DNA of 64,000 bases from Ostrea edulis (GCF_947568905.1 NC_079168.1:18166001-18230000); one strand, 5' to 3'. Shown: positions 18,185-53,800, counted from the stretch's first letter. Translations and numbers: made by a program. The notes: generated from the letters alone by a model not told the origin.

Positions 18185-21100
18185 ATTACTTACAGTTTTG
18201 AATTGGAATGTCAGAGGAATTATGTCCTCTAGTGTATCTTTGACAAATCTTTTACGTTTATCTGACTGTGATATTGCTGTAATCTCAGAATACAAGTTAC
18301 CCGAATAATGTTCTAAATTCTTTGGTTGTATTGATAAGAATTATATAAGTGCAGCAAAATTTGAAAAATCGGACAAAAATGATGAAATAGGCAAAGGAGG
18401 TGTAGCAATATTATACAAAAATTCCTTAGAATTTTACACATCTTCAGTTTACACTAACTCCAACAGAGTTGTTGGTATCTGTTTAAAAACTCCAAATCAT
18501 GTTCCATTATATGTTTTTGGTGTGTATTTACCGTCTGAAAACAATGTTGATCAATATAGAGAAGTGTTGAATATACTTAACGGATTATTCACTAATTACT
18601 CAAATCATGGTCATGTAATTTTTGCTGGTGACATGAATGGAAGCATACTACAAAAAGATGCTGACAGGACAAATATTTATAAATCAGCTGAACTTACAAA
18701 TTTTGTCAGGAAAAACAACATGTATTGTGATGTTACTAGTAGTAAGAAAAACCAATGTCAAGATGTTTATACATTTGTACCTTGTAAAACCATGTTAGAT
18801 TATATATTTGTTAGTGAATCCCTACAAAATCGTATTTTAGATTATGCAATTATAGAAGAAGGTATAATATCTAGCACCTCAGACCACTTACCTATAATAG
18901 TTAAGATTGAAGTTTTGGAAAACCCACACACATTATTACCAAACACATCTAAATGGCCTGCGTGGCACAGAATATGCACAGATACAAAGATCCAAGTACT
19001 GTAACCAGCTGAAAAAAGACTTAAACCATATACTGCTCGATGAGAACAACATGTCGTCTGTAAATGATATAAATACATATTCAACAGAAATTGTTAACGC
19101 TGTGATAAAAAGTGCCAAACTAACTATTCCCATGTGTTCATATAATCCTCATACCAAACCTTATTGGAATACCTCAGTAAAGAATCTCATAAGAACGAAA
19201 TGGAACTTAGAGTCAAATGGGTAAAAGAAGGAAGACCTCGGGGTATGCAGCACATATCGTATGCTGAGTACAGGTTGTATAAACATGCAAAACGCCATTT
19301 CCGACGATGTCAAGAAAGCGCCTCCCAGGACTTTATTCGAAAAACGTACGAAGATATCGACAACGCTGCAGGAATCGACATTCGATTGTTTTGGAAATAA
19401 ATTCGTCGACAAAAACCACGTCAAACAAAGTTATATCCAGAAATACAGTTTGCCGAAAGAGTAGGAAATACACCTGAAAGTGTCGCTTCAGTTTTTGCTG
19501 AATACTTCTCAACTGTGTACGAGCCCGGACAAAATGAAATGTATGACAATCAATTTTACAACAATACCATTCGACAATACAATCGCATCAAAATACAAGA
19601 AAATCAAAATTCTGCCGATCTTCCAGGTGGATATATTACAGAAAAGGAAGTAGTTGATTCTATAACACTATTAAAATTTAAAAAAAAAGCCCCTGGGCCC
19701 GACAAAATTCAATCGGAACATTTGATTCATGGAAAATGTGTATTATCAAAATATTTATGTGTATTATTCAACAGCATAATAAAACTAGGTAAAATCCCCT
19801 CTGGATGGAAACAAGGTTTTATAGTACCAATTTTCAAGGGTGGAAACAAACAAAAAACTTCTCCTGACAGCTACCGACCCATTTCATTATTGTCTACTAT
19901 ATTCAAAGTTTTTGAAAAAATCATCTACACAAGGATTATGAACGTAACATTCAAAGAGAAATACCCGAGTCCTCAACAACAAGGTTTTCATAAAGGTTTA
20001 AGTACTATCACAGCTGCATTTAACCTTCAAGAAACAATCTTACATCACATTGAAAACGGATCACGTGTATATGCATGTTTTCTAGACAGCCGAATAGCCT
20101 TTGATACAGTATGGAGAAAAGGATTGCTTTGTAAAGTTAACGAAATAGGTATCAAGGGAAAATTATGGACATTGATAGACGACTGCCATATCGATACCAA
20201 AAGTGCTGTAATTGTAAATTACCAACAATCAGACTGGTTCCCGGTTGAACAAGGAATACGGCAAGGCGGTGTCTTATCTGGATTTTATACACAGTTTATA
20301 TCAATGACTTACTTAACGAACTTGGTCACATCAATAAAAACTTCGGAATTCATAATATAGAGTCATCGACCTCTGCGAGATATTGCCTGTTTATCGTCAA
20401 CTCCGCACTCACTCCAGAATATGTTGGATGTAGCATACACTTATTCTTGTAGATGGAGATTCTCTTTCAACGCTAAAAAATCATGTATTATAGTATTCGG
20501 TAAATCTCACAATGTCGTCTCAAATCAATGGTTAGTGGGCGATGAAATCATTCCTGTAAAGAGTGACTACAATCACCTTGGGATCATTCAAAACTCTCAT
20601 TTCAAATCTCTAACCAGGACAAAGGAGGCATGTGACAAAGGCAGACGATCTTATTACTCCATAAAACACTTATCTTTAGAAAATTCCAATCCAGTTACTC
20701 TTGTGAATCTTTATAAAAAGGTAGTCCTACCTTCTACATTATATGGATGTGAAATTTGGAATGATCTTAAAACCCAGGATCTTCAGATGTTGCGTCGACT
20801 TCAACATTTTATCGTTAAAGATATTCAAAGCTTAAATCTATCAACACGGTCCGATATGTGTGAAAGCTTATTAGGTCTCAGACCTATCATATCTGGAATT
20901 GATAAAAGGAAACTGTTGTTTTTAGGAAAACTGTGCAATTTCTCTCACAATGTGCTGGCGAAACAAATACTTCTCTTCAGACTCTTTACATTTTTGTGTA
21001 ACCCATGGGAAACCACGCACGGATTCATTAAAGACATTCTAGTCATTCTGGATAAGTACTCCTTGACGCAATACCTTGCATCTTACTTGGAATCTGGTGC

Positions 21101-26644: not shown

Positions 26645-27781
26645 TCATGGCTTTATAAATAGTTCTTTGACAGTCAGTCTGAACTGCTTATTATAGATGA
26701 GATAAATTATTGGATTTGTTGCATTGTTTATACAATATGTCTTCACCAGAACTTCATAAAACGCCCTGCTTGTAGGTGAAAGATCTTCAATATTTACAAC
26801 TGAGCTTTTCAGAAGTATCTGACTAAGAAGATAAGGGAGGTAACTAAAAAGAAACGACAGCGTCACTGCAGAAAGAATGACGGTGGTTTTGGTCAGTTGA
26901 GCTTTCCGATGAAGTTTCGAATGACTGCTCCATTGAATCTCGTTCAGCATCACGTGATCACAGTCTCGAGAAATTGAAAACAGAGATGAAGACCTCCTGA
27001 CTTCGTATATTGTTAGGCTGTCTCGCGTGCAGGTTCCCTGAGAACTAAGTGAATCTCCGCTATCAATTCGAGGTATGTTTGTATTTTGTATCTGAGAACG
27101 TTTCCACTGCCAAATTCGCTTAAAGACTCTTAAGTATAAGAAAAACATAATGCAGAATGAAGTCACGAACACGGTTAAAAGAAATCCGTAAAAAAGGCCT
27201 ACAAACATGGAAAATTGGACATCATCTGCTATTGCGCATGTGCTGCCTACAAGTCCGGGTATGCAATTATTTTTAACTGTGCTTTTACCATAAATGCATG
27301 CTGACGTCCAGGAAATGACAATTGCAGTGGTTATGAGAATCAACACTCTTATTTTTGGATTGGCGTTTGAATACGGTATGGGCGAGCATATTTTTTGGTA
27401 TCTGTCTAAAGCAATGCACATCAACATTAATCCCTCACAAGCGTATGTCAGCATTGAAACACTTCTGAAGACTCGACAGAGTATATCATTGTCGAACAGC
27501 ACCGGGTTTCCTATCACATATATCTCAAAGGGAATGCTGAGACAACAGCAGGCAAGATCAAAAATAGCCAGCCAGAGAATATAAGTGTTGGCTGTTGTTC
27601 GCTTAAATTTCATGCCATATGCATACACTACAAAACCATTTCCGATCACACCAACAAACATTATTAGTCCAGAAAATATCATGGCAGCAATGTTATAAGC
27701 AGCAATGTGATAATTCCACATCCACAATAGCAATTGTCTCTCAAATCCTAGAGTTGCATTGGTTGTATTTTTGCATTCCAT
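26645..27781 (-). CDS. Intronless class A (rhodopsin-like) GPCR, peptide-receptor-like orphan, 378 aa
   Basis: Seven hydrophobic segments. GN in TM1, LAIFD in TM2, C in TM3, IALDRY, FLFSYLP in TM6, NNATNPIIY in TM7. N-terminal N-glycosylation sequons NTT and NAT. Confidence 0.95.
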   Translation of the reverse strand: MECKNTTNATLGFERQLLLWMWNYHIAAYNIAAMIFSGLIMFVGVIGNGFVVYAYGMKFKRTTANTYILWLAIFDLACCCLSIPFEIYVIGNPVLFDNDILCRVFRSVSMLTYACEGLMLMCIALDRYQKICSPIPYSNANPKIRVLILITTAIVISWTSACIYGKSTVKNNCIPGLVGSTCAIADDVQFSMFVGLFYGFLLTVFVTSFCIMFFLYLRVFKRIWQWKRSQIQNTNIPRIDSGDSLSSQGTCTRDSLTIYEVRRSSSLFSISRDCDHVMLNEIQWSSHSKLHRKAQLTKTTVILSAVTLSFLFSYLPYLLSQILLKSSVVNIEDLSPTSRAFYEVLVKTYCINNATNPIIYLIYNKQFRLTVKELFIKP

Positions 27782-29751: not shown

Positions 29752-30558
29752 ATGACATTTTTCGTGTATATAGCAGTTTTGTTTATTTCTATTGAACAAA
29801 CAAAGGTTTGTATTTACGAAAATATTTCGGATGTTTTGCACATGATATATCTATTTCATTTTCATGAAGTTATTTCATTTTTATTTTTAAAGGTATATAT
29901 TATGTATCTGGATTTGTTAGAAAACGAAATAATATTATGTTATACTACATGAACAGTTATGCTTACATGGATATTAGATTTATTTTAATTATATACGTAA
30001 AGGAAACTTTTGAAAGATTCATTTCATCAACCCTGCCCTGTCTTCAAAGATTTTTAAAAAAAATCTTTATTTCAGTCAACGTCATCATGCGAAGCGACAC
30101 AATCAGGGTGCAACTGTACATTTAATGAGGAAGGTGTTTTTGACACTACATCAGAAATCATGGCGGCGTCAATTGGAGCAATGGGTCCACTGCTTCTCAC
30201 AGGCGTTGGCTTCGCAATCTGGAAGTACATCCAAAGTAAAGGCCAAGACATCGCTTTTGAGCGTGCGCCGTCGGATGTTTCTGATGATTATTACGATTCC
30301 AGGCGAGGATCAAAGGGTAGAGTAAGTCCGCAAAGTTCGGGGTCCGATTACAACTACGCCCGTCGTGGATCCACCCCGCTTTCTATCACAGACACAGAAA
30401 ACGAATTTTATCTCGCAGAAACTCCATCCTCAGAAACACCGGAATTGAATCAGGGCGATAAATGGAACCCATCTTCCAGGGCGGCCCCACCATCTAACGC
30501 AGGCAGGGCGTCTATCGCACCAGCCAAGTCGGAAGCTCTTAATGGGTGGATGTTCTGA
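29752..30558 (+). CDS. Small type-I membrane protein 1, 178 aa: signal peptide, ~30 aa 3-Cys ectodomain, TM, Ser/Tyr-rich tail. Exons 29752-29805 and 30076-30558
   Basis: MTFFVYIAVLFISIEQTK|GTTTGT donor (phase 0) joins the tttatttCAG acceptor, giving STSSCEATQSGCNCTF..AASIGAMGPLLLTGVGFAIWKY. An upstream UTR acceptor lies at 29731. Confidence 0.75.
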
Positions 30559-31048
30559 AGGCGGAATTCAACGGAGAATGTTGCTAGGATTTTCATGAAA
30601 GCATAATCAACATCGTAATTATAAATAAGCATTTCTAACAAGCGGTAATTATATTTTAGATCACCATAAAATGTGAAATACGCCATATTTGAAGCGTTCA
30701 AAGGTATTTTGAGACACAACTAGAGTAATTTTTCATTCGCCATGTATTTAATGCAATTTTCTTTATTTTAGAATAAGACATTCTTTGTATTGTTTTTTTG
30801 CTTTTTTTCGCAAAACGTCTCTAAATCATTGATTAATTAGAAAATCACTATATCTATAAATGACAAAAATAGCAATGCAATGATAATAATGTATTAATAG
30901 TAATGTAATTCTTTTTTAAATCAAACTTTAAACGTGTGTAACTTTATAATGTTTGTTGAATTTGTTAAGTTTGAAATAAAGTCATGTGTGAAAGTGATTA
31001 AATTGTTCTACAAATTCATTGTCCATGTTCTTTCACGTATTATATAAT

Positions 31049-31318
31049 GGGTAATCGATCCAGTACATGTTGATGATTCATTCATGTTCGGATGGGTAAT
31101 CGATCCAGTACATGTTAATGATTCATTCATGTCCGGAGGGGTAATCGATCCAGTACATGTTAATGATTCATTCATGTTCGGATGGTTGATCGATCCAGTA
31201 CATGTTAATGATTCATTCATGTCAAGATGGGTAATCGATCCAGTACATGTTAATGATTCATTCATGTTCGGATGGGTAATCGATCCAGAAACGTGTTAAT
31301 GATTCAATCGTGTTCGGC
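31049..31318. repeat. 45-bp minisatellite x6
   Basis: Unit gggtaatcgatccagtacatgttaatgattcattcatgttcggat starts at 31049, 31094, 31139, 31184, 31229 and 31274. Confidence 0.95.
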
Positions 31319-31403
31319 TGATACCAAAGCACGAAAGATCAAGAATTTCAAATGTACAATTCGCAGCTTTCATGAAAGGTTGACAAGAAATTAATGTTTA
31401 CGG

Positions 31404-31411
31404 CATGGGAA

Positions 31412-31466
<55 letters not shown>

Positions 31467-31491
31467 TTAAAGTCGAAAAGAGAGAGAGAGA
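31404..31491. repeat. Interrupted (GA)n microsatellite
   Basis: Direct reading of the sequence. Confidence 0.95.
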
Positions 31492-34400
31492 GTTATAGTA
31501 GTTAAAGTCGAAATCAAAATCTGAAAACTGTAGAAGTAACTTCATATGAATTCAACACGTGGTTTTGGAAACCATGCACGATAAATAGAAATGTATGAAA
31601 ACGACCCCTAACTCATTGGTATGTAGAATATGTGATTTCCAAAGTCTCATTAATAAAACAGACTTCTAGAGTATATATATATTCATTTCTTTATATCAAC
31701 AGTTGTTTAAATACCATCGTGGATGGATAATGAAAATGAAACGTTATGACAAAAATACTAAAGTCCAAATAAAAGCTTTGCAATAGATAGAGGATCCAGG
31801 CATGTTGTAAATTACATTAAAACCAATTTCATTTTCGTTAGAGATATACATAACCTTAAATATGACTTAGATGATATAGATTTGATATAGTCGTAATACT
31901 GCTTTGAGGTGTAAAAAGTTTGTTTTTCAGTAGGATAAGAAAACCAATCATCTCATCGAAGTGTTCAAAGTCAAGAGAATTCTCTATTGAAAAATGTTTT
32001 TTAAGTATTTGACATCGTTATCCGTGTAAAACAATGTAATTAGCTGTTGGTATTTTACATGATTCAATGATTTATTATATCTAAAGAGAATTTAAATCTA
32101 TGTAATGTACTCAAGGATTCCAAAAGAAGAAAAATTCCTATCCACCAAATAACCACATGATTATCGATTCTTAGATTGATAGCAGTGAGTGGTATCAAAG
32201 CTTTAACTAAGCTCGAAAAGTATGCGTGTGATGTGTTGCAGTTCATCCCCTCATGTATTTTTCAAAAATGAAATTCATATTTTAAATGACAGAAGATTTT
32301 CTTCCTTACAACTCATCACTGCTCAGAGTACATCATCGGCGTCGCAATATGATACTGAATCGAAACCAGCTACCCAGAGTTTACATAACGATATCTGATT
32401 CACCATATGTGTTCACAGCTAGAGTGCAGTAAGCTTAGCGGGTTTTTTTCGCGGATCCTATTATTTCACGAAAAGTTTGCGAGCATTAATGACTCTGATA
32501 TTGCATAAAAAAGCTATCTAAAACTTAGGAACATTTTATTTCTTACAAATTATAAACTATGTAATATTGGAGTTATTGGTCCTACAGTGGCGAATTTTGG
32601 CACTCGTTGAGTGTGAAAATTTGCTCAAAAGCTCATTAATTTCTTACACCTAACTTGCACTTATATTCACCAATACTCCTATATTATTTACTTTTCTTTT
32701 AGACTATTATACATTTATTGCATGATAGTGAGAGGGATATGAAGATCTATTCATCCAAGAAAATCATATTCCCTCAAGGAATACGACTTTCTTGGGTGAA
32801 TAAATCTTCACATGCAATTTTTTTTTTATCATACCGAGACAAAGCAAGGCTACATAGATGTATTTGAAATTGCGGGGGAAAATCATGGATACTCTCATTT
32901 ACATGTATATGCAGCTGAGCTCGCCCAGATGGTATCGCCGTCAACATATTAGAATATACAAGCAACGAAATAGAATAATATGATAACAATTTCTTATGTT
33001 CCTCTCTCTCTGAATGTTGATCTCTTACATCTGATCCGTGTATCAACCAAAACAAGAAACATTGGTGCAAGCACCTAATTTATGAACCGAAAAGGTTTTG
33101 GGGGAGTGTAAGAACTAACTAAAAATTATTTGCGAGTGTTAACTAAAGAACTTCTCGGAGAAAGAAACTGAGGTGTTACGAAGAATTTCTTCTTTTAAAA
33201 TCGCGCAAAAATTACAACACGAAGACTTGTGAAATTTAGAGGAGTTTCGATCAAATGCGGAGATGACCAAACTAAGGGAAATGAGTCATTTACTCTGGCG
33301 CTGTCGGTCAATAATGCTGCTAGCCTTAAGGTTTCAAAGCAATACAAGCTGTAACTGACGGTAAATAAATTGAAAAAATTTAAAGAACAAATGGAATAAC
33401 ATACTTGAGATTGGACGTATATAACTTCTTAGAATCAGAGTGAATCTGAAACAATGAATATTTAAGATATTTGTGATTGAATACATAATTATAATCTCGG
33501 TGAATCAAGAGTGGATCTGACACAATAAACCCGTAAAATCAGCAGAAAATGTCGATTCATGAGTTATTGTCTTCCTGACAGTAATTTCTGTTCGTAAACT
33601 CCGATGTGCATTGACCTTGAAGGTCACCAGTTCGGAAAAAGCGGAAAAAGAGGCATTGCACAGGTGTTAGATTTGTAAACTATTCAATATGTCAATCTTA
33701 TTGCAAATTCATTACCAGAATTTCATCTGTGACACATTTGCGTAATTATTACTTTCTTACACTTAGAAAACTTAAATAAATTCATGACACGATATGGATA
33801 TTCTAAAACAAACAAATGTCATGTCACAGTTTTCATCTTTGTATGATCTCGGTCTCATCAATGCTATTACATGTATGTTCGGCGATCATCGTTCCCATGT
33901 CAGAGTATAGGACGAGGTTATGGCGGTTTATACGGAACGCTCATTGTAGGTATGCTCTCCAGCTATATCCCTTGTTTATTTTGCTGATGTTTTCATCAGA
34001 TCTTGATGACTATATTAGTTATACTGATGAGTGTTAATTGGTGCATACTTGGATAGTTGAAAAATACCGTCCGTAACAGCTGGTATTGCTTTAACTTGAT
34101 TCGCAGTAAGTCAACGGCAAGCTATACACGATTAAAGTTTGCTCGATCGATCGATATAAAGCCTCGACTAAAAATAACAGCAGGCTATTCTCAATGCACG
34201 TTTGTCCGATCAATCAATACACTTAGCCCAACCAAAAGTAATTTCTTTGATTTCAATCTTTTCCGTGATGCGGAAAATTTCTGTTCTCGGCAGTTTCCGT
34301 AAAGTCATGTGATAAATATTCTTGTACCTCTAAAGTATGTTTAACGCTTTACATCTGTATCCAAATTTGAAAAATAAAATGTGTTTACTAAGCCTATACC

Positions 34401-35489
34401 ACTGATTTCACAAAAAACTGGAAGTTGGGGTTAAAGTGCAAAAAAGTTTACTTTGCCAAGCCGGTTTTCTTAAATCGTGAAATCATTATCCCCAATACTT
34501 TACAAAGAAATAAGTTCGTTTGGTAACATATTTGGACCCCTGAATTATTAAAAAATGAAATACATGTTGAATCAAACTTCTACATTGCAAAATACTGACG
34601 GAGATACACTTGTCTCAAAAATAAAACGAAACTTTGAAAATGTGTCACATTTCTACTACATTGACATGGTCAAAATACGTACGTAACACAAATTTCCGGA
34701 AAATATCATGAAATTTAACGACTTCTGAAGATATTTGAATAGGTCCGCATAATATCACCACTTTAAAATTTTCACACGCAAAAGATCTATGTGTAAGCAT
34801 TTCACATACAAAAAATTACGATGGTGATACTGTGCGGACCACACTTATTTCTTATTTTAATGTTCATATTTTAGTAGTGTTTTTCTTCTACTTAATAGCT
34901 CACATCAGTAAAATGTGGGCCCGGAGAGATCACGAGGCTGGTATATCTATTTTTCCCATTTCAAATAATAAGGATATATTCTTTGTCAGAAAAGGTCTTT
35001 AAAAATCTATAAGTAAAACTTTTAGATTACTATGATAGAAATTTAATAATTGAACATTGTTCATTAGATCTTGTATCATGACGTCATTGCTAAATATAAA
35101 CTTAGACGTCATTTGATGAATCTCGCGATAGTAAGTGGATCACATACACTGGTAAATCAGTTTTACGTATTATACCATGAATTATGTTTTGTCTGTGGTA
35201 ATAAAAAATAAATAATATATAAAGTTTTGTAAAATAATTAAATAAGATACAACAAACGCCATTCTTTATTAGAACACATCCGCGGTAACAGCCATTTATC
35301 CCGCAGCAACGAATGCGACTTCTCAAATCAATATAGTTTTTATTTAACAAAGCTTGCCGTCTTTAGAAACAACCTTATATAGTAAATTGAAATACATGTA
35401 TCCTTTGCTTAAAGTATTTATATCATTTTTTTAAAAATGATCACATAATCAAACTTTTCTAAAATGTAATGGTAAATCTCATAAAAAAT

Positions 35490-35524
<35 letters not shown>

Positions 35525-35533
35525 AAAACACCC

Positions 35534-35787
35534 GATTGATCGATTGGAAATTGTTTAACGTCCCTCTCGAGAATCTTTCACTCACATGGAGACGTCACCA
35601 TTGCAGGTGAATGGCTGCAAAATCTAGACCTATGTTCGGCGCTTATGACCAATGATCAGGGAGGGATCTTATCGTGTCATACCTGCTGTGACACGGGACC
35701 TTGGTTTTTGCGGTCTCATCCGAAGGTCCGCACCTTACGATAAGCAAGGGGTACTGAAGACCTACTCTAACTCGTATCCCCACGGGA
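35534..35787 (-). mobile_element. tRNA-derived SINE copy
   Basis: Reverse complement of the SINE body seen at 22926-23187. Confidence 0.8.
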
Positions 35788-37843
35788 GAAAAACATTTGA
35801 TAGAAACTACTGTACACAACTTTTTCCAGTATGACATTGAAGTAGATATCGTATTTGTACTAAAAATAGTATTGTTTCTTTTTAACCTTATGAAAATGGT
35901 GAAAAGCAGATATTCCGTGTGTTTAATAAAATGATATTTATTTTTCACACAGGAAGAAACAAAATATAGCAAAGAACGTTTGAATTGTCGAAAATTCGCA
36001 AGAAGAATTATAAGATCATTTCTGTTATTTATTGAATTACAGAAACGTCTTTGATAGTTGCAATGAATAAAATTTATTACATTGCAATTTTTTTTAAAGA
36101 TTGAAAATCTTGTAAAACTGATAAGTCGTATGTAAATTAGATCACCAGCAAATTATCTCCCTTACGTTGAACATAATTTCAATCAATAATTAAGTATTTT
36201 CACATTATGCATTTTCTACCGATCAAAACGGAAAGGAAGTGCATTGTCCGATCCGAAGACTGTAAAATACTTCAACTATATTGGACAGGCTCTTGCGGGC
36301 CCATAATAAGATGATTAAACTGTGCATCAAGAACTTGTTATCCCAACACGCGTGTAATTTTAAGAATTTCTTTTGCGATTTACGACTAATGTTTTAATGT
36401 ATTCATAGAAAATGACTGGGATGTTTTGTGACGTCAGTCTAAACTGTGTAGCTGAGAATACAATTTGTTGCAGGACCTCGTATCGCTCGATGATTCGTGA
36501 TGTGAACGAAAACATAATTGTTTTATCATGATGACATGGACACTCCAATGCAATGCTCTTGATAAAGACATTAAAACAGAAATCAACATGCAGTTCATTA
36601 CTATCGATTGACATCGCAGCGCCAAAATGATTATCAGTCTAATTTACATGATTGTGAAAATGACGTCAGAATGCCTGTCTGATTAATGCATTCAAAGGAA
36701 TATGGTTTTATAACAGTCCAAACATGTTAGGCAAAGGTTCTGAACTGCTGGCAAAGTAATTTTAGAGATTTGTCGGTGACAGTCTTTTTCTGGTAACACA
36801 AGGGAAATTTTGAAAAGCAGACATCACTCATTTAGAAAAAAAAAAATGATGTGGTATGTTCATTTAAAACGAACTTGAACGTTTCTAATGATGAATTTTG
36901 AATGGAATATTGGTGAACTCTCTATGGTTTTTATTCCTCTTTAATCTGACATGCATTCACTTTGCTAAAGCCTGATCAAAAATATCAAACAGTATAAAAT
37001 TCTTTGACATTGTCAAAAGTTAATGACCCGATTTTCTGTTTTGTTTGTCTTTTATTTAAAAGCTCACCCAAAATAGTCTAAAGAACGAAAATTGGCCTTT
37101 TAAAATGAAGATGTCACAAATTGATTTTCTTTACCTGACTGTCTGTCCGGGGGACTTTGTTGTAAGCAGTGATACATACCTCCCGGTTTAGATCTAGGAT
37201 TACGGAATTGATAAAAGGCCCTGCGTCGTTAGCATTGGAGAATTTGTAATATATCTCAATTTATTATTATAACGTGTTTACTTACCAATTGTATTGGCAG
37301 TTGGGGGCTATGAGAAGAAAATTAAAATATTCACCTGCAAAGGAGCTGAATAGTATTAAATCTGACCCTAATGAAGACAGATAGGGAACTTTACTTGAAT
37401 GTTATATAATTTCTGCTGGGAAGAAACAACCCGTATTTTTAAAAGGTTGAATGTGAAACATAATTAATTTCTGAGAGAGAATTTGTTTTGAAGTAGGAAT
37501 CTTTTCAAGATGTAAGATACTCCTATGACGTCACTGGACAACCAATTCGATGAAAATTGATTTTGGATCACTAAATCACCATGTCAATAGTTTAAATCCA
37601 ACAAATCTTCATTTTGAAGATATCAAATCTATGGGAATGTATCCAGTCATTCTTCTACTGGCAAACAATGTCTTGATAAAATCAAAACTAATTGAAAATA
37701 AGTGAACAGATGAACATTTCCTGGAGAGAATTGTACATATCAAAATTGTTTTCAATGTTTCCATTTTGGCTGCATGCCAAGAGATCGAAAATAACTTCTA
37801 ATCTTGTGTTCTAAACCCAACCTAATCCGTAAACAGAAAGAGC

Positions 37844-38268
37844 ATGGCATCACATTTATATCTGATGCTTCTGATAATTCTAAGTGGATATTTTCGTAAT
37901 GTCGATGCAGTAAGTAATTTCTTCTTTTTTTCTTATTTGAGGATAATATTAAGAAAATATATCGTTCAATTTTTTTTACCCAGTTCGGAAAGCTAATATA
38001 CAATAAAGACTATCTAAAACTATTCACATAAAAACCCCACCACGAAATGAATATGATAAAATTTATACTTAAAGGCGTTCGAACATGAGTATTTAGTATT
38101 GTCAATTCTTTTAGAAGTATATTCATGATTTTATTACCAAAAGAATTAACAAAATTTAATCCCCATCAAAAAACAAATTTAAAAGAAAATTGTTATAAGT
38201 TAAAACTGATTAACTATAAAATTTTACTTTTGGGGTGGAATGAATTCGGCTAGTATACACTGTACTAC

Positions 38269-38340
<72 letters not shown>

Positions 38341-38487
38341 ACATAATTTGTTTCCATAATGTAATAATGTAAAACGTTTGAAGATTTTTAAAAAATGAAA
38401 GCGCTTACGTTTTACAACGTGTAGTCATATTTTATTTAGATCTTTACTTATTGATTACCAGGCGACAGAGCCAATTTTTCACATTTG

Positions 38488-38540
<53 letters not shown>

Positions 38541-41500
38541 CAGTTAGGGTTCTTTATCGTGCCAACGCCTGTCGCGATGCGGGACCTCCGTTTTAAAAGT
38601 TATATCCGAAAGACCCGTGATTCTCAAAGGTAGATCGATCCTCATGTGATGTCATTGGTTTTTGCAAAAATCTTTATGAATTAAACTTTGCGCATGATAG
38701 AAATATATCTTTCTGAAAGATTTTTATTCACTGGATAAATAAAAAAGTTGGTAAACTATTAATACTGAAAAGGTTTATAGTTTCCATAGATAATCAATTA
38801 ATGTTGTCAAGGGAAATAAATCTAATATAAAATGGCTATGCACAAAAAGCATAGAACACAGGTTTGGAGAAACTTCATATTTATTCCGTATATATTCTGA
38901 AACCATTTTAATACAGATATACGTGAAAGAAAATTTTATTTAATCCAAATATGTTCTTTGTTTTCTGCAAGAAAAACATTCGTAATTTACTTTTTGATTA
39001 AAATTGAAAAACTGTATCGTAATATTATGAGATTAATCATGTAAAACTGTATTTGACACCATCTCTAAAGAAATAGAATGAAATTAATACAAATTGTACC
39101 TACCTTTAAAGCATATGATTTAGAATTTTACAGAGGTTAGACAGGGTGTCGTATTTGTGAGGGAATTATTCAACGAAAATTGTAAATACTTTTAAAAGTC
39201 CTATGTATTCCTTATGTTGTACTTAATAAAGGAAATTAAATAATTAAGAAATGTATTTTTTATATTCATATCGGTTAATTTAATGAACGGAAGATTCATC
39301 GGGATCTTTATTTACTGCACATTTAAGAGGTCAATTAGTCTTAATATTTACTATAAGCCATCCGAAAATACGCATGCTTCTCCAAGAATTTAAAAGTTAT
39401 CCAAAATTTTAAAAGTTGACGAAAGTGGAATGTTAATTCTTTTCAAAATAAAAAAACCCCCTATAATGGGCTCTGAGAATAAACGTAGTCTCATATATCA
39501 AAAGAAAGATGAAATATGTTTCACATAGTCTTTCTACACAGGATATATCTGCCTTAAGATGGTACTGTAAAATTTACTTTTTTAAAATTTACTGTTGAGT
39601 TAATGAACAAAAAATGCTATATTATGCGATGTGGTACAAGAGGTAAACAATGGTATGCTATGTTTAAATTATTTACTTCTTGCACCACAGTTTCTGGTTT
39701 ATCAAAAGAATGTATTTTTCAGAGTTAGTAGTGCGGTGTTTTAGAAATATATTGATGAAAAGCCTAGTACCCTATGAAGAAAATACTATGGATAGCTTCT
39801 TTGTAAATCCTGTAATGCAAACTAGAACTGTCCAGGATAGGATACATATTCACAATGTTGACATTGAAAGACAAAATTTGATTAGATTGTTCATCTAATA
39901 TGGCATCTCTGGGGTTCAAAAATGTTTACAGTAACAAACAAAATAATCAGAGAAGCTCTGCATTGCTCAACACGCGATTCACCCCAATAAAGAAATGTGA
40001 ATTCCTTAAAAGTCAAATGCAACTGTTCATTTTAATTTCTCCCAACAAACAAAATATCTTTTTATCTAGTTTCATCTGGTTTTGAAGATGATTTTATTAC
40101 TGTTACCGATAGAATCTAAAACAAAATGACTAAGTGCACTGTGCAAAGAGTTAAACACCTATAAAATGAGGAAATGTTGTTCAACGAAGATGTAAATATC
40201 AGGTACAAAGTTTTGTATGGTGAATAAAGAGTATACAAAATTTGCAGGAAAATCCATGCACTAGTTTTTAGAAAATGTCCGGACAAAATCAAGTTCACAC
40301 ACATACAGACAAACGGAAAAACTAACAGAAGGACACGGTGAATCCATTACACTCCTCCTAAACTTAAGCAGTAGTCTCTGTGAGAGAACTTTATACAAAA
40401 TCTAAAACAAATTGAAGTCCAAACAGTTAAAAAAAAAAACAATAACCGTAAAATGAAGACAAATTGTCCAATCATGATGAAGTTAAATGAAGACAAATTG
40501 TCCAATCAAGATGAAGTTAAATGAAGACAAATTGTCCAATCATGATGAAGTTTTTAGGTGGACATCTCTGTGTGGTGAATAAAGAATGTTCACATTTTCA
40601 GGAAAATTATAGTCTTTTAGAAAATGTCTAGACAAAATCATGTTCACAGACAGACAGACAGACGGACGGACGGGCGAACAAACTAACGGACTTGCTGATT
40701 CCAAGATACCCTTAAACTTCATTTGCTGGGGTATTACAACTTTTGGTAATTCTTTCCTGAAATATGTCTGGGATATCATATCATTCATTGACTGAAGATA
40801 TCACACTTGGAAAGGGGTCTAAATTCCCACTCCATGGAATCTGAACATTATGGTATTTTGGAATGGTGATCTCGTTTACTATTGTGAACTTATAGGTTGA
40901 TGGTTATGAGACGATGTTGTGATGACGAGTCGATGACACGGTAATGATTAAATGCAATGATGCCATTACGATCGATCAGTATCGTGCCATTGCTATAGCA
41001 ACTTTAATGCGTACATCGCTTTAACGTCATCGCTTCATCGTGCAAACGTAACATCGTGCTATCGACCTAGAAATCGATAGTAAGAAAGTGAACAACGTGG
41101 CCCTAGCCGGATTACATACGATATGGACACGTTGTTCACAATCGCTATGACCTTGTAGATTGATGAAGCGATGACGATACAGCGACGTTCGTGCGATTAC
41201 AAAGCGATGAAGTTAGATGACGATGACGCGATGTCATTTACGCTATCGCGTCATGTTTTACATCCAGAGACTGTTTGACAATAATGCTTTTCTCTGTTTC
41301 AGTCTTGTGAGGTACCCAAGTGCACCTGCAATATAGGTGGTGAGGATGTCGAGGTGGAACAAAATCTCGCAGGAAACGAAGCTTTGGCGGGAACCGTGGG
41401 AGCATTAAGTTCACTTCTTCTCACCGGAAGTGGTATAGGAATGTACATGCTCTATCAGAAACGTTGCAAAACTCCAAAGATATCGAGGCAGGTTTCTGAT

Positions 41501-41683
41501 TTATCCATCAGTAAACAACCACCATCTGGACGAAACAAACTGTCACCCCCGCCACCGTATCGCCCTGACACCTCTGCCTCCAGGAATATATACCGTGCTG
41601 CAATGCACGATCCAACAAGTCATCGCGTGGGCAACCGCAGCAACACACAGCACAGATATGACCGGATGTCGGACTGGAATTGA
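37844..41683 (+). CDS. Small type-I membrane protein 2 (paralog of 29752-30558), 148 aa, PPPPY motif in tail. Exons 37844-37909 and 41303-41683
   Basis: MASHLYLMLLIILSGYFRNVDA|GTAAGT (phase 0) joins ctgtttCAG|SCEVPKCTCNIGGED..AGTVGALSSLLLTGSGIGMYMLYQKR. Intervening exons cannot be excluded. Confidence 0.75.
38274..38338. repeat. (TA)n microsatellite; another lies at ~38490-38537
   Basis: Direct reading of the sequence. Confidence 0.95.
40110..40735 (+). mobile_element. pearl/HINE-like element with ACAG/ACGG microsatellite and an internal 34-bp x3 repeat (40451-40552)
   Basis: Two related units ending ..cggacaaaatcaagttcacac.. and ..acagacagacagacggacggac..cccttaaacttcatttgctggggtat. Confidence 0.6.
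40896..41262. mobile_element. CGATG-rich, internally palindromic non-autonomous repeat in the intron of membrane protein 2
   Basis: Dense cgatg/catcg motifs in opposing orientations. Family not determined. Confidence 0.45.
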
Positions 41684-41927
41684 ACAAAATATCAAAACTT
41701 TTCATTGATGTCCATGAATAATTTCTAAATTATTGTGAATTTTAAGCTAAAACGTAATACATTAAGTGTTTTTGATTTTTAGGGGAAAAAAAGTTTGGTA
41801 CGGGTGCTAGCGCTACACCTCTGTGAGCGGCTTTTTACAGGAATCTTGTTTTTAATATGCATCATTTGTGTTTTGAACTAGATATTTAGTCATATTATAA
41901 AATGCTTTTGGTGCAGTAAATTGACTA

Positions 41928-43029
41928 GCTGCAATAATGTAGCTCTATCCGATTTTTTTATTCTGACGTTTTCGGGATAGGACTACAATTACATAGGATA
42001 TCCGTAATGGTGCAAAATGATTTTATGAATAACCGATAATAAACTCCGTGTATTAGTCCCAAATGTTGTTTATACCAAAAGGAGTACCAACTTTGTGCTT
42101 GGGCATGTCTAATAAAGTTGTTTTTCATTAAACATCATTTACAGCAAGCAAAATTCTTCGTCTGCTCCGCCATGCTTATTACCGCAAGATCTCGTTGGTG
42201 GATCTACTGAAAAACCTTAACACTGACAATCTGCGCGAAAACGTTGTTATTCGAGCAATTTCGACAAAGAAGGGAAAATCATATGGTTGCAGAAATAATT
42301 TACACTCTGCTATTATGTTTTGATTTTAAATCTAAACATTTCCTGACTTTCTTTACGTAAATAAAATGATCTTCTATGTTTCTTAGTCAATATATAAATT
42401 TACAACCTGCAACTTTAGATTTATGAGGCTCTATTCTACCGTTTTCAACAATTTCGATAACTTCCATTTTCTCGATTCATATTTGTGCGCCATGTTTGAT
42501 GTACTGAAGTTTCAACTTCCGATTGTCAAGTCATTTGCATATGCCATATAAGGTAGTATTTACATCAATGGACAAGTATGGAGGTGAAAGCTATTTCGTC
42601 GGTATTGAAAAGGTTTGAATTTAATATCAAGTTAAAAACCGAACAGCAGAGTGTAAATTCTTTTTGCAACAATATGATTTTCCTTTCTTTGTCGAAGTGG
42701 CTCGAGTAACTACATTTTCGCGCTGATTGTCAATGTTTAGGTTTTTCATTAGATCCACCTACGATATCTCGCGATAACAAGCATGGCGGAGCAGACGAAG
42801 AATTTTGCATGCTGTACATTATATTTAATGAAAAACACGTTTATTAGACATGCCCGAGCACAAAGTTGGTACTCCTTTTGGTGTAAACAACATTTGGGAC
42901 TAATACACAGAGTTTATTATCGGTTATTCATAAAATTATTTTGCACCATTACGGAGATCCTAGGGAATTGTAGCCCTATCCCGAAAACGTCAGAATAAAA
43001 AAAATTGGATAGGGCTACATTATTGCAGC
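41928..43029. mobile_element. ~1.1-kb foldback DNA element with ~330-bp TIRs, TA-flanked
   Basis: ta|gctgcaataatgtagctctatcc..ggatagggctacattattgcagc|ta. Arms ~41928-42255 and ~42700-43029. Confidence 0.85.
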
Positions 43030-50800: not shown

Positions 50801-53800
50801 AACACGGACCACAGGACACACCAGAGGTGGGATCAGGTACCTAGGAGGAGTAAGCATCCCTTATCGACCGGTCACATATATAATTTCGAAAGATATTTGT
50901 GTACAGATTTAATTGTTCAATATTTACATCACACGTTTCACGATAACCCTCCAGTATGAAAGGTGAAGATAACAAACAGTGATCAATCTCATAACTCCTA
51001 TAAGCAATACAAAATAGATAATTGGGTAAACACGGAAACCTGGACACACCAGAGGTGGGATCAGGTGCCTAGGAGGAGTAAGCATCCCCTGTCGACCGGT
51101 CACAACCGCTGTGAGCCCTATATCTTGATCAGGTAAACGGAGTTATCCGTAGTCAAAATCAGTGTGCCAAGAACGGCCTAACAATCGGTATGAAACACGT
51201 CAGACAGCATCTGACCCAATGATAGGTTATATTGGCAAACTAGATCGTTATAACGACCATAGAATTTGCCGGGTTATGGGAATTTCACAGTAAATTTAAA
51301 AATGGAAGAAAAATTCGGAGAACTTGGATATTTGGAAGAAGTTTACTTACAAATTCGATAGTGAGATAGAAGATTCCTTCTCTGATACTAGTGACGTAGG
51401 CGCGTCTTTAAATAATAAAGTTTTTAAAAAATGATTGAAGAAATGGAGAAAAAACTAAGAGCAGAAAATTCTGAAAATACTATGATTGAGGACCCAAAGC
51501 GATTCAATAATAATAATTAAAAAAAAAAAAGAAAAAAAAAAGAAATAAAATATCTACAGGATAGTCAACGGTTTAGCTCTACAAAACGGGGTACCTGTAA
51601 AGTGCGAAACGAAATCGAAACGAAACGAAATCTACCGAAACAAAACGAAATCTACCTAAACGAAACGAAACGAAAACCACCGAAACGAAACCTACCGAAA
51701 CAGATTGTATAACCGAACTCTTTTAATTATAATAATTAAAAATGGTATCTTAGGCCCCTGTGAAAGTTACCACATATAAAATTCGCCTCCCCTTTGATGT
51801 AGGCTTTCGGCTTGACTGTTACAAAGTTTTAAAAATTGGAAAGGGGGGGGGGGGGTAAGCACAAAGTACATATCCGTAGTTGATTAAATGACATGTACAA
51901 TTAGTTTTGGATCCATAAATTTCAGAACCGAGGGTTACAGTCTCAGAGATCTGGGGAAACACACTATACGAGGTGTGGGATCGCCGACGTTGGATCCGGC
52001 TTTGGGCATAGATACATTGTTTGAAGAAGCTCGTGTCTGAGAAAATTGAAAGCAGGAATACCTCTTAACCTCTTATTTTATCTCTACCTGCTGAGGTGCG
52101 AGTACTTTCAATAATGGAAAAACTCTATACCTTTGGGGTGTTGCTAAGACGGGGAATTGAAAACGGGACGGAAAACGGAATTTTTTTAATGCAATAATAT
52201 TAGGAGGAGGTCGGCATTTTGTAAACTGAAAAGGCTTAAGAACGAGGGAATTTTAAGCAGAAATCACAAAGAGAACGGGAGGACATATTCAGAATCCACC
52301 GTTTGATATACTACATACAAATACACAATATCCACATGTATACATATATTTGTCTTAAGAATAAAAATACTGAAACATGTATTTATGTCCAAAAGCGGAT
52401 CCAACGCCGACGACCCCATCCCTCGTTTAGTGTGTTTCCCCAGACCTCTGACCTGTGAGACTGTAACCTTCCGTTCTGAAATTTATGGATCCGAAGCTAA
52501 TTGCACATGATATTTATGTACTTTGTGCTTACCCCCCGCCCTTTCCAACTTTTAAAACTTTGTATCAGTCAAGCCGAAAGCCTACATCAAAGGGGAGGCG
52601 AATTTTATTTATATGTGTTAACTTTAACAAGGGCCTAAGATACCATTTTTAATTATTATAATTAAAAGAGTTCGATTATACAATCTGTTTCGTTTCGTTT
52701 CGGTAGGTTTCGTTTTGTTTCGGTGGGTTTCGTTTCGTTTCGGTAGATTTCGTTTCGTTTCGCACTTTACAGGTACCCCTACAAAACGGAATACAAAATG
52801 GGGTGTGAAAATAATTCAAGGTAAGCTATGAGCGAAGCTGGGTAGAATTACGCCATATTAGGTAAATAAGTACAGTAGTACGACATAAATGAGTTCGCAA
52901 AATGGCCGACCGTCACGTCAATCGCAATAACACCTGAAATATTCTAAGCGCCTGTTTTGTATCAATAACAGAAAATTCACTTACCAAATGGACTTAATAC
53001 TTCGTAATATGACCTCGGATACGTAACACACTGCGAATTCTCCTTGGAAGAGTGTTATAAAGACTCCGAATATAATGTAAAGGGAGGTCACTCCAAAATA
53101 TCACGGACAACTCTCTCCAGGTCTTTGGCATTTCGGATCTCATTTGTCCGTCTCTGTACCCGAAGTTTTAACACTTTCCAGACATTTTCAATAATGTTAA
53201 TGTCTGGACTCTGTGGAGGCCATGGAAGTGTACTGATATCATTGCCCTGCTTCCACTGATTTGAGCGCAAAGATACGTGGCAAGGAGCATTGTCCTCTTG
53301 AAAGATCCAGCGGCGATTTGTAAAGTTTCGCGCAACAACTGGCCAGAGACATTCATCAAGAACTTCCATATATTTATCACTGTTCATGTTACCATTCACA
53401 GCTTTTAAAGTTCCAACACCATAGTAAGATATACAATCCCAAAACATAACAGAAGCTCAACATTGTGTCTCTCTGTCACTGCGTAGTCCTAAACATTCGC
53501 GGCGTAATCTTTCCTCGGATTTTCTCCAAACATAAATTTTATTATCCCGACCAAGTTCAATTTTAGTCTCATCACTGAAAATGATGGAAGACCAGTGGTT
53601 ATCAACAGTCCAGTGTTATTTTTGCCGACAAAATCTAGTCCTTTTCTCCCGATTCACACGCGATATTGTTATTTTCTTGGAAACAACACACCGTTTATAG
53701 CCATCCTCGAATAATCGTCTACTCACAGTTCTGGTTGATACATTGCATCCTGTCCTCGCATTAAATCTGCTTGTAACATCTTTTAAAGTCTGACGCCGGT

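What the first reader, a model, noticed from the sequence alone, without database searches (positions are those of the whole stretch)
29752..41683. Two-member family of miniature 3-cysteine type-I membrane proteins resembling signalling adaptors
Seen: both have a phase-0 signal-peptide exon and one terminal exon encoding SCE-x(3-5)-CxC, an ectodomain of only ~30 aa, a conserved TM A..GA...LLLTG.G with small-xxx-small motifs, a basic stop-transfer, a disordered tail and a Trp 2-3 residues from the C-terminus (GWMF*, DWN*). The ORF track misses the signal exons. Known: very short disulfide-linked ectodomains with signalling tails define adaptors such as DAP12, CD3zeta, TRIM and SIT. These two lack the TM acidic residue of DAP12/CD3zeta and the 6-8 Cys pattern of Shisa-like proteins. 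Inference: an undescribed family of covalent-dimer membrane adaptors or regulators (the odd Cys number fits an interchain bond).
Basis: partly seen in the sequence, partly recalled or inferred. Interest (0 to 1): 0.7.

Follow-up and report, generated by a model that had tools for sequence, protein, structure and literature searches.

The report
Mollusc-wide mini membrane-protein gene pair
Two neighbouring flat-oyster genes encode tiny single-pass membrane proteins (three outer cysteines, a glycine-rich membrane helix, a floppy inner tail with short docking motifs). They belong to an unnamed family kept as a linked pair across bivalves and also present in snails, and no function has been tested.

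Summary
Gene A (29752-29805 + 30076-30558) and gene B (37844-37909 + 41303-41683) have canonical GT..AG introns. Each encodes a hydrophobic leader, C-x(3-5)-C-x-C, an acidic linker, a Gly/Ala-rich membrane helix, a basic stop-transfer and a disordered tail ending near a Trp.

They are real genes: dN/dS is 0.08-0.16 against other oysters, the exon structure is the same in scallop and zebra mussel, and spliced transcripts of relatives join leader directly to body. I got no splice-junction read for this oyster.

"Two members" is true only of this genome. A profile search found 37 further clusters, all small; every one that carries a name is molluscan and "uncharacterized". A-type and B-type clades both span bivalves, and the genes are linked on one strand in oysters, scallop and Dreissena.

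No Pfam, PDB or Atlas relative was found, and the family fails the Shisa-like and DAP12/CD3-zeta definitions (no ITAM in 52 members, no charge in the helix core).

Conserved tail motifs (PPxY, kept in B; RRGSxP, kept in A; a C-terminal Trp) suggest a membrane-helix- or disulfide-mediated oligomeric scaffold that recruits WW-domain or phospho-dependent partners. That mechanism is inferred only.

The scan has not reported this family on other DNA. A different small-membrane-protein family with PPxY tails was noted 10 Mb away.

The parts
29752..29805 (+). Gene A exon 1: start codon and an 18-residue hydrophobic leader (probable signal peptide), phase 0.
   Evidence: Translation. GT donor at 29806. 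The best 9-residue window has mean Kyte-Doolittle hydropathy 3.0. Homologous leader exons occur in a Crassostrea-type transcript (L005 72-119) and in Saccostrea (L006 12224-12271).
29806..30075 (+). Gene A intron (270 nt), GT..AG with a polypyrimidine tract.
   Evidence: The spliced orthologue transcript L005 joins leader directly to body.
30076..30558 (+). Gene A exon 2: the whole mature protein (160 residues plus stop): ectodomain, membrane helix, tail.
   Evidence: Orthologues are 67-87% identical. dN/dS is 0.11-0.16.
30088..30117 (+). A: invariant three-cysteine motif C-x6-C-x-C, containing an N-C-T sequon.
   Evidence: The Cys columns are invariant in 28 of 28 members.
30154..30222 (+). 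A: boundary Glu plus a Gly/Ala-rich transmembrane helix (small-xxx-small ladder).
   Evidence: AlphaFold helix at residues 25-57, pLDDT up to 93. These are the lowest-entropy columns of the family.
30361..30378 (+). A: RRGSTP, a conserved basophilic-kinase / 14-3-3 mode-1-like site (the function is inferred).
   Evidence: It is conserved from gastropods to oysters in alignment A2.
30544..30555 (+). A: C-terminal GWMF (family motif L/I-N-x-W-M/L).
37844..37909 (+). Gene B exon 1: start codon and a 22-residue leader ending V-D-A (fits the -3/-1 rule), phase 0.
   Evidence: The homologous exon in Saccostrea is L006 17566-17631. The NCBI orthologue models P0008 and P0009 join it directly to the S/T-C-E body.
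37910..41302 (+). Gene B intron (3393 nt), GTAAGT..CAG. It holds AT microsatellites, a 34-bp tandem repeat and a high-copy repeat.
41303..41683 (+). Gene B exon 2: the whole mature protein (126 residues plus stop).
   Evidence: Orthologues are 76-83% identical. dN/dS is 0.08. An RNA-seq contig covers 41485-41751.
41306..41329 (+). B: three-cysteine motif C-x4-C-x-C.
41378..41455 (+). B: boundary Glu plus a Gly/Ala-rich transmembrane helix, followed by KRCK (juxtamembrane Cys, a candidate palmitoylation site).
   Evidence: AlphaFold helix at residues 25-55..
41549..41560 (+). B: PPPY (PPxY, a WW-domain ligand motif).
   Evidence: PPxY is present at the homologous tail position in about half of the family representatives.
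41585..41596 (+). B: NIYR, the core of the conserved N-I/V-Y-R-A/S-G tail motif.
41657..41680 (+). B: YDRM (Yxx-hydrophobic) and C-terminal SDWN.

Best explanation
A and B are two linked paralogues of a conserved, unnamed molluscan family of very small type-I single-pass membrane proteins.

Shown:
- Each gene has a leader exon and one body exon.
- The mature protein has about 25 extracellular residues: three invariant cysteines (C-x3-8-C-x-C) and an acidic linker.
- It has a strongly conserved membrane helix (E-x-L-A-G-A-V-G-A-L-S-x-L-L-x-x-G-x-G-x-G-I-W), a basic stop-transfer, and an 80-115-residue tail that is predicted disordered but is under purifying selection.
- The A/B duplication predates the bivalve radiation, and the two genes have stayed next to each other on one strand.

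Inferred mechanism:
- The protein assembles through its glycine-zipper-like helix. It is probably locked by an interchain disulfide from the odd cysteine, as a homo-oligomer or an A-B hetero-oligomer.
- It then acts as a membrane scaffold. Its cytosolic tail presents short linear motifs: PPxY for WW-domain proteins such as NEDD4-type ubiquitin ligases (kept in oyster B, lost in oyster A), RRGSxP for a basophilic kinase or 14-3-3 (kept in A), N-I/V-Y-R, and a C-terminal Trp motif.
- This would control sorting or turnover of itself or of a partner membrane protein.
- The gastropod members carry the A and B motifs together, so the bivalve pair looks like a partition of one ancestral tail.
For: Gene reality:
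- Canonical splice sites.
- dN/dS of 0.08-0.16, including the tail.
- The same two-exon structure in scallop and Dreissena.
- Complete spliced transcripts in relatives, with in-frame stops upstream of the ATG.
- N-terminal hydrophobic cores in all 20 full-length members examined.

Family:
- 39 representative clusters at E<=1e-3 in 1.84 billion proteins, all 65-204 residues except one low-complexity hit.
- Named members come from Ostreidae, Pectinidae, Pinctada, Mytilus, Dreissena, Mactra, Mercenaria, unionids, Solemya, Haliotis and Babylonia.
- Two clades in the tree, with the bivalve B-type clade supported at 99/95.

Linkage:
- Saccostrea: A then B, 4 kb apart.
- Ylistrum: A then B, 3 kb apart.
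- Dreissena: B then A, about 10 kb apart, same strand.

Helix and tail:
- The helix columns have the lowest entropy in the family (G34, A35, G43 and G45 are near-invariant) and form a small-xxx-small ladder.
- AlphaFold gives only the helix; the tail has pLDDT around 50.
- The motifs are conserved across the family.

The general kind, short single-pass proteins whose PY motifs drive trafficking and degradation of partners, is documented for Shisa-like, CYYR1, Comm and PRRG4 proteins (PMC5578492).
Against: - No experiment or expression data bears on function.
- No junction-spanning RNA was obtained from this species.
- PPxY is absent from oyster A and from several B-type members (Mytilus, Solemya), so it cannot be the family's universal function.
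- The 14-3-3 and kinase reading of RRGSxP, and any role for the C-terminal Trp, rest on motif knowledge only.
- A disulfide-linked oligomer is not testable here. A monomer with one internal disulfide and a free or lipid- or metal-bound Cys would fit the sequence equally well.
- The very high conservation of the helix fits binding to a partner membrane protein (an auxiliary-subunit role) at least as well as self-association.
Confidence: 0.45

Rival explanations
1. Auxiliary (regulatory) subunit of a multi-pass membrane protein, working like FXYD on the Na,K-ATPase, KCNE on K+ channels, or RAMP/MRAP on GPCRs. The conserved helix would dock onto the partner, and the tail would tune it through phosphorylation.
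For: The membrane helix is by far the most conserved segment from gastropods to oysters, which is typical of single-pass subunits that pack against a partner. RRxS sites in the tail resemble the regulatory sites of phospholemman (own knowledge). An intronless rhodopsin-type GPCR lies 2 kb upstream in both Ostrea and Saccostrea.
Against: No Pfam match to FXYD, KCNE or RAMP in any of 34 members. The GPCR neighbour is not within 10 kb in the scallop or Dreissena loci, so it is probably only oyster microsynteny. Three invariant ectodomain cysteines and PPxY are not features of those subunits.
Confidence: 0.25
2. A divergent branch of the Shisa-like (STMC6) superfamily of Cys-rich, PY-tailed transmembrane adaptors (Shisa, CYYR1, WBP1, VOPP1, TMEM92).
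For: Same overall plan: a leader, a short Cys-bearing ectodomain, one membrane helix, and a proline-containing tail with PPxY (definition in PMC5578492).
Against: The defining six-Cys C*C*CC*CC pattern is absent: there are three Cys, invariant. The helix is Gly/Ala-rich rather than carrying the aromatic motif. No member hits a Shisa, CYYR1 or WBP1 Pfam model at E<=1.
Confidence: 0.08
3. One reading: an immunoreceptor-type covalent-dimer signalling adaptor, analogous to DAP12, CD3-zeta, TRIM or SIT, used by haemocyte receptors.
For: A very short ectodomain with an odd number of invariant cysteines, a conserved helix, several conserved tail tyrosines, and a conserved Glu at the outer helix boundary in 41 of 46 members.
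Against: No ITAM in 52 members. The four ITIM-like strings fall in leaders or the helix, or occur in a single member. No charged residue in the helix core in 49 of 49 members. No expression or synteny link to immune receptors.
Confidence: 0.05
4. A homo-oligomeric small channel (viroporin- or M2-like). Glycine-zipper helices would line a pore, and ectodomain disulfides would staple the oligomer.
For: A small-xxx-small / glycine-zipper pattern runs along the whole helix, with conserved Ser/Thr. The language-model neighbours include influenza M2 and stannin, but only at scores of 0.78-0.79, which is chance level.
Against: The Atlas scores are below any useful threshold. The long, motif-rich, selectively constrained tail is not explained by a pore function.
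Confidence: 0.05
5. Not genes, or mis-modelled: chance ORFs, or terminal exons of larger genes with big ectodomains.
For: No junction-spanning RNA from this species was obtained. One NCBI model in Saccostrea (P0003) uses a different first exon.
Against: Strong purifying selection. Conservation across Mollusca. Complete short transcripts in relatives with upstream in-frame stops. A conserved leader exon.
Confidence: 0.02

Closest known systems
Shisa-like / STMC6 adaptors (Shisa, CYYR1, WBP1, VOPP1, TMEM92)
   Same: Small type-I single-pass proteins with a short Cys-bearing ectodomain and a disordered tail. The tail carries PPxY motifs that recruit WW-domain (NEDD4-type) proteins to control trafficking of partners (PMC5578492).
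   Different: Three invariant Cys (C-x3-8-C-x-C) instead of the six-Cys C*C*CC*CC pattern. A Gly/Ala-rich helix instead of an aromatic one. One PPxY at most, and none in oyster A. No Pfam hit.
Commissureless / PRRG4
   Same: Short single-pass proteins that sort a partner receptor through PY motifs in the tail (PMC5578492).
   Different: Comm has no ectodomain cysteines and no leader, and PRRG proteins have a Gla domain. No sequence similarity was detected.
DAP12 / DAP10 / CD3-zeta / FcR-gamma
   Same: A tiny ectodomain with cysteine(s) that form interchain disulfides, and a helix that drives assembly (own knowledge).
   Different: No ITAM or YxxM motif and no intramembrane Asp. The conserved acidic residue sits at the helix boundary.
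FXYD / KCNE / RAMP single-pass auxiliary subunits
   Same: Small single-pass proteins whose most conserved part is the helix. Basic juxtamembrane region with phosphorylatable tails (own knowledge).
   Different: No FXYD motif and no Pfam match. PPxY and the Cys motif are foreign to them.
Syndecan / neurexin-type cytoplasmic tails
   Same: The language-model search lists them among the weak neighbours, at 0.77-0.83. They have a GxxxG-type dimerising helix and a conserved extreme C-terminus.
   Different: No large ectodomain, no glycosaminoglycan attachment sites (serine-glycine), no EFYA/EYYV PDZ-binding C-terminus, and no hit to Pfam PF01034.

Membership tests
DAP12/CD3-zeta-type ITAM adaptors | ITAM (YxxL/I-x6-12-YxxL/I) in the cytoplasmic tail | tested here: not met
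   A regular-expression scan found 0 of 52 family members with an ITAM.
DAP12/CD3-zeta-type ITAM adaptors | Acidic residue inside the membrane helix that pairs with a basic residue of the receptor | tested here: not met
   0 of 49 helix cores contain D, E, K, R or H. A Glu two residues before the core is conserved in 41 of 46 members, but it lies at the boundary.
DAP12/CD3-zeta-type ITAM adaptors | Interchain disulfide in a very short ectodomain | not testable with these tools
   Three invariant Cys in an ectodomain of about 25 residues. The bonding pattern is unknown.
Shisa-like (STMC6) | Six ectodomain cysteines in the pattern C*C*CC*CC | tested here: not met
   Only C-x3-8-C-x-C is present, in 28 of 28 members. 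The pattern definition is from PMC5578492.
Shisa-like (STMC6) | Aromatic motif in the membrane helix | tested here: not met
   The helix consensus is Gly/Ala/Ser/Leu-rich, with a single aromatic residue at its cytosolic end.
Shisa-like (STMC6) | PY (PPxY) motifs in the tail | tested here: inconclusive
   One PPxY in oyster B and in about half of the representatives. None in oyster A, scallop A, Mytilus or Solemya.
Shisa-like (STMC6) | Sequence match to the Shisa, CYYR1 or WBP1 profiles | tested here: not met
   hmmscan of 34 members against Pfam-A at E<=1 gave none of these families.
FXYD / KCNE / RAMP auxiliary subunits | Family signature detectable by the Pfam models | tested here: not met
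   No such hit at E<=1 for any of 34 members.
The unnamed molluscan family described here (working definition) | Leader, then C-x3-8-C-x-C, then an acidic linker, then E-x-L-A-G/A-x-V/A-G-A-L/M-S/G-x-L-x-x-x-G-x-G helix, then a basic stop-transfer | tested here: met
   Both window genes match the A2 profile at E about 1e-38 and carry all signature columns.
The unnamed molluscan family described here (working definition) | Leader exon plus a single body exon, phase 0 | tested here: met
   Seen in the window, Saccostrea, and scallop and Dreissena. The gastropod Babylonia splits the tail into a third exon.

The most novel reading that the evidence does not exclude
A and B are obligate partners. 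On this reading the pair has stayed adjacent and co-oriented since before the bivalve radiation because the two chains form a disulfide-linked, glycine-zipper heterodimer. One tail (B) would recruit a NEDD4-type ligase through PPxY, and the other (A) would be a phospho-switch (RRGSxP/14-3-3). Together they would make a mollusc-specific two-chain trafficking switch for an unknown receptor or transporter.
Probability: 0.12. Interest if true: 0.6.

Novelty: new variant of a known kind. Interest (0 to 1): 0.4.

Why it matters
Molluscan genomes hold many "uncharacterized LOC" genes. This one turns out to be a sharply defined, strongly constrained family found in bivalves and gastropods, two lineages that by my own knowledge separated in the Cambrian. 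It has an unusually conserved membrane helix and a motif-bearing tail, and its two paralogues have remained neighbours.

If the tails recruit WW-domain ligases or 14-3-3, the family would be a lineage-specific addition to the small set of single-pass adaptors that control surface levels of receptors and transporters. It would also give a handle on membrane-protein trafficking in commercially important bivalves.

For annotation, the finding shows that short leader exons are easily missed or mis-modelled. The Saccostrea model of gene A is an example.

Tried and rejected
- Pfam scans of the two proteins and of all 34 aligned members gave only noise at E>=0.075.
- A profile search of PDB sequences gave 0 hits at E<=10.
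- The ESM Atlas feature search had a best score of 0.87 for B and 0.82 for A. All hits were generic single-pass or EGF-type neighbours below the 0.9 lead threshold.
- AlphaFold on family alignments showed only the helix, plus a weak hairpin in B. Mean pLDDT was 59 and 62, so no fold search was run.
- RNA evidence:
  - The run search found four tiny RNA-seq libraries and several DNA runs.
  - Laying four of the runs on 37400-42400 gave one RNA contig inside B exon 2 and 3'UTR, and no joint across the intron.
  - The other three runs are DNA.
- A literature search for six orthologue LOC identifiers found 0 papers.
- A search for further paralogues in the window and the genome found none.
- I considered that the neighbouring GPCR might be a functional partner. 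It is conserved next to gene A only within oysters, so I treated it as microsynteny.
- I considered an EGF-remnant origin for the C-x-C hairpin. The evidence is too weak.
- SignalP and DeepTMHMM were not available. Hydropathy and the -3/-1 rule were used instead.
- The joined exon1+exon2 sequences were deliberately not built or searched.

Full report
**What is in the sequence**

The window is AT-rich eukaryotic DNA with no N. Earlier notes of the scan name the genome as the flat oyster. That agrees with the closest relatives found here, which are all Ostreidae.

- Gene A starts at 29752 with an ATG and 18 codons of a hydrophobic leader, and ends on a GT donor. After a 270-nt intron with a polypyrimidine tract and AG, an open frame of 160 codons runs from 30076 to the stop at 30556-30558.
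- Gene B starts at 37844 with a 22-codon leader ending V-D-A, followed by GTAAGT. After a 3393-nt intron, a 126-codon frame runs from 41303 to the stop at 41681-41683. Both introns are phase 0.
- The two body exons encode the same plan:
  - S-C-E, then three or five residues, then C-x-C.
  - An acidic stretch.
  - A Glu followed by a Gly/Ala-rich hydrophobic helix.
  - A basic stop-transfer (WKYIQSK in A, YQKRCK in B).
  - A polar tail of 114 residues in A and 81 in B, with 68-69% disorder-type residues.
  - A Trp three residues (A) or two residues (B) from the end.

Each exon was searched by reference, and no step used the spliced protein.

**More than chance, and really genes**

- The two body exons align at E=6e-9, with 31% identity over 68 residues.
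- Against a second Ostrea-like species, a Crassostrea-type transcript and Saccostrea echinata, the body exons have dN/dS of 0.08-0.16. The value stays at 0.07-0.21 in the tail alone.
- Leader exons homologous to those of the window lie upstream of the body exons in Saccostrea. The leader-plus-body structure recurs in the scallop Ylistrum and in Dreissena.
- A Logan transcript contig of a Crassostrea-type orthologue (L005) reads straight from leader into the Cys motif and stops after NGWMF.
- Four independent transcript contigs of a clam B-type member (L009-L012) have in-frame stops upstream of the ATG and encode just 151 residues. In those species no large ectodomain exon exists.
- NCBI models in C. 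virginica and S. echinata agree for B, and for A in C. virginica. The S. echinata model of A uses another first exon and skips the conserved leader exon.

For this oyster itself I obtained only one RNA-seq contig, covering 41485-41751 in B exon 2 and 3'UTR. It shows no junction. The other three runs laid are DNA. The junctions in this species therefore remain inferred.

**The family**

- The genome has only these two copies, by single-sequence and by profile search.
- A profile of the oyster proteins, searched against 1.84 billion representatives, found 39 clusters at E<=1e-3. Fifteen were at E<=1e-10. All were 65-204 residues long except one low-complexity hit.
- Every named member is "uncharacterized" or "hypothetical" and molluscan:
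  - oysters, pearl oyster, scallops (Ylistrum, Pecten, Argopecten) and Mytilus;
  - Dreissena, Mactra and Mercenaria;
  - unionids (Sinanodonta, Potamilus) and the protobranch Solemya;
  - the gastropods Haliotis and Babylonia.
- The unnamed members come from Logan, ENA and JGI assemblies of unknown organisms. I could not run a second, iterated search, so relatives outside Mollusca are not excluded.
- In the 34-sequence alignment the three cysteines are invariant. The helix columns have the lowest entropy, with consensus E-x-L-A-G-A-V-G-A-L-S-(P/S)-L-L-V-(T/G)-G-x-G-(F/L)-G-I-(W/Y). Small residues form i/i+4 ladders along the whole helix.
- Further conserved tail elements are R-x-x-S-x-x-S-D/E-D/E-S just inside the membrane, PPxY, RRGS-x-P-L-S, N-I/V-Y-R-A/S-G, and a C-terminal Trp as L/I-N-x-W-M/L or S-D-W-x.
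- Gastropod members carry the A-type and B-type motifs in one tail. In oysters, A keeps RRGSTP and LNGWMF but has lost PPxY. B keeps PPPPY, NIYR and SDWN.

**History and linkage**

- A maximum-likelihood tree separates a B-type clade from an A-type group.
  - The bivalve B-type clade has support 99/95. It holds Solemya, Potamilus, Dreissena, Mytilus, Pinctada, scallop and oyster B, with Haliotis as sister at 91/89.
  - The A-type group holds Sinanodonta, Dreissena, Mactra, scallops, oyster A and a caenogastropod clade.
- The root is only a midpoint and the deep forks are weak. I therefore conclude that the duplication predates the bivalve radiation, and I leave its relation to the gastropod split open.
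- The two genes lie on the same strand in each case:
  - 7.3 kb apart here, from A's stop to B's start;
  - about 4 kb apart in Saccostrea;
  - about 3 kb apart in Ylistrum, in the same A-then-B order;
  - about 10 kb apart in Dreissena, in the order B-then-A.
- Pinctada has both types on the same chromosome-sized record.

**Comparison with known families**

- Pfam finds nothing for any of the 34 members. The best E-value is 0.075, spread over unrelated families.
- The PDB profile search finds nothing.
- The Atlas feature search stays below 0.9 and returns only generic single-pass neighbours.
- AlphaFold, with the family alignments, predicts only the helix (A residues 25-57, pLDDT up to 93; B residues 25-55). 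B also has a low-confidence hairpin after C-x-C. The tails sit at pLDDT around 50-60.
- Shisa-like proteins are defined by six cysteines in C*C*CC*CC, an aromatic helix motif and PY motifs (PMC5578492). Only the PY criterion is met, and only in part.
Neither is present: 0 ITAMs in 52 members and 0 charged residues in 49 helix cores. A boundary Glu is conserved in 41 of 46 members.

**Mechanism**

- Shown: a cleavable-looking leader, a minimal Cys-bearing ectodomain, one very conserved small-residue helix, and a disordered but constrained tail with conserved short motifs.
- Inferred:
  - The helix mediates tight helix-helix packing.
  - The odd cysteine could staple an oligomer.
  - The tail recruits cytosolic partners. 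PPxY is the classical WW-domain ligand. RRGSxP fits basophilic kinases and the 14-3-3 mode-1 pattern. Both statements come from my own knowledge of these motifs.
- I therefore favour a trafficking or signalling scaffold of the general Shisa/Comm kind, at confidence about 0.45 for the whole statement. Most of the doubt lies in the mechanism rather than in the gene models.
- The main rival is an auxiliary subunit of a channel, transporter or receptor (0.25). The extreme helix conservation suits that reading equally well.

**Verdict**

It is not supported as a DAP12-like immune adaptor. It belongs to a known general kind, small single-pass motif-bearing adaptors, but to no known family.

Noticed in passing
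window 26645-27781 (-): An intronless 378-residue rhodopsin-family GPCR ORF (Pfam 7tm_1, E=5e-28) lies 2 kb upstream of gene A in divergent orientation. The same GPCR (78% identity) sits upstream of gene A in Saccostrea echinata (L006 7689-8816, minus strand). It is not within 10 kb of the pair in the scallop or Dreissena loci.
   Followed up: partly
L006 10001-13435 (Saccostrea echinata): The NCBI model of the gene A orthologue (P0003) begins with a non-hydrophobic first exon. It skips the conserved leader exon that is present at L006 12224-12271. This is either a mis-model or a leader-less isoform.
   Followed up: partly
window 31047-31317: A 45-bp tandem repeat of 6 copies (91% matches) lies just downstream of gene A and creates mirror ORFs on both strands. 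An (AG)24 microsatellite follows at 31416-31463.
   Followed up: no
window 38400-38900 and 41900-42400: Very high-copy repeats, shown by summed contig depth up to about 1e5 in DNA runs. One lies inside the gene B intron and one just 3' of gene B. They are probably transposable elements.
   Followed up: no
window 18522-20360 (+) and 53616-54083 (-): Fragments of a non-LTR retroelement (endonuclease and reverse-transcriptase domains) and the DNA-binding part of a Tc1-type transposase.
   Followed up: no
window 41324-41353 (B residues 8-17): AlphaFold predicts a weak beta-hairpin right after C-x-C, and the language-model neighbours of B lean towards EGF-type proteins (0.81-0.83). The ectodomain might be a remnant of half an EGF module. 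This is a lead only.
   Followed up: no
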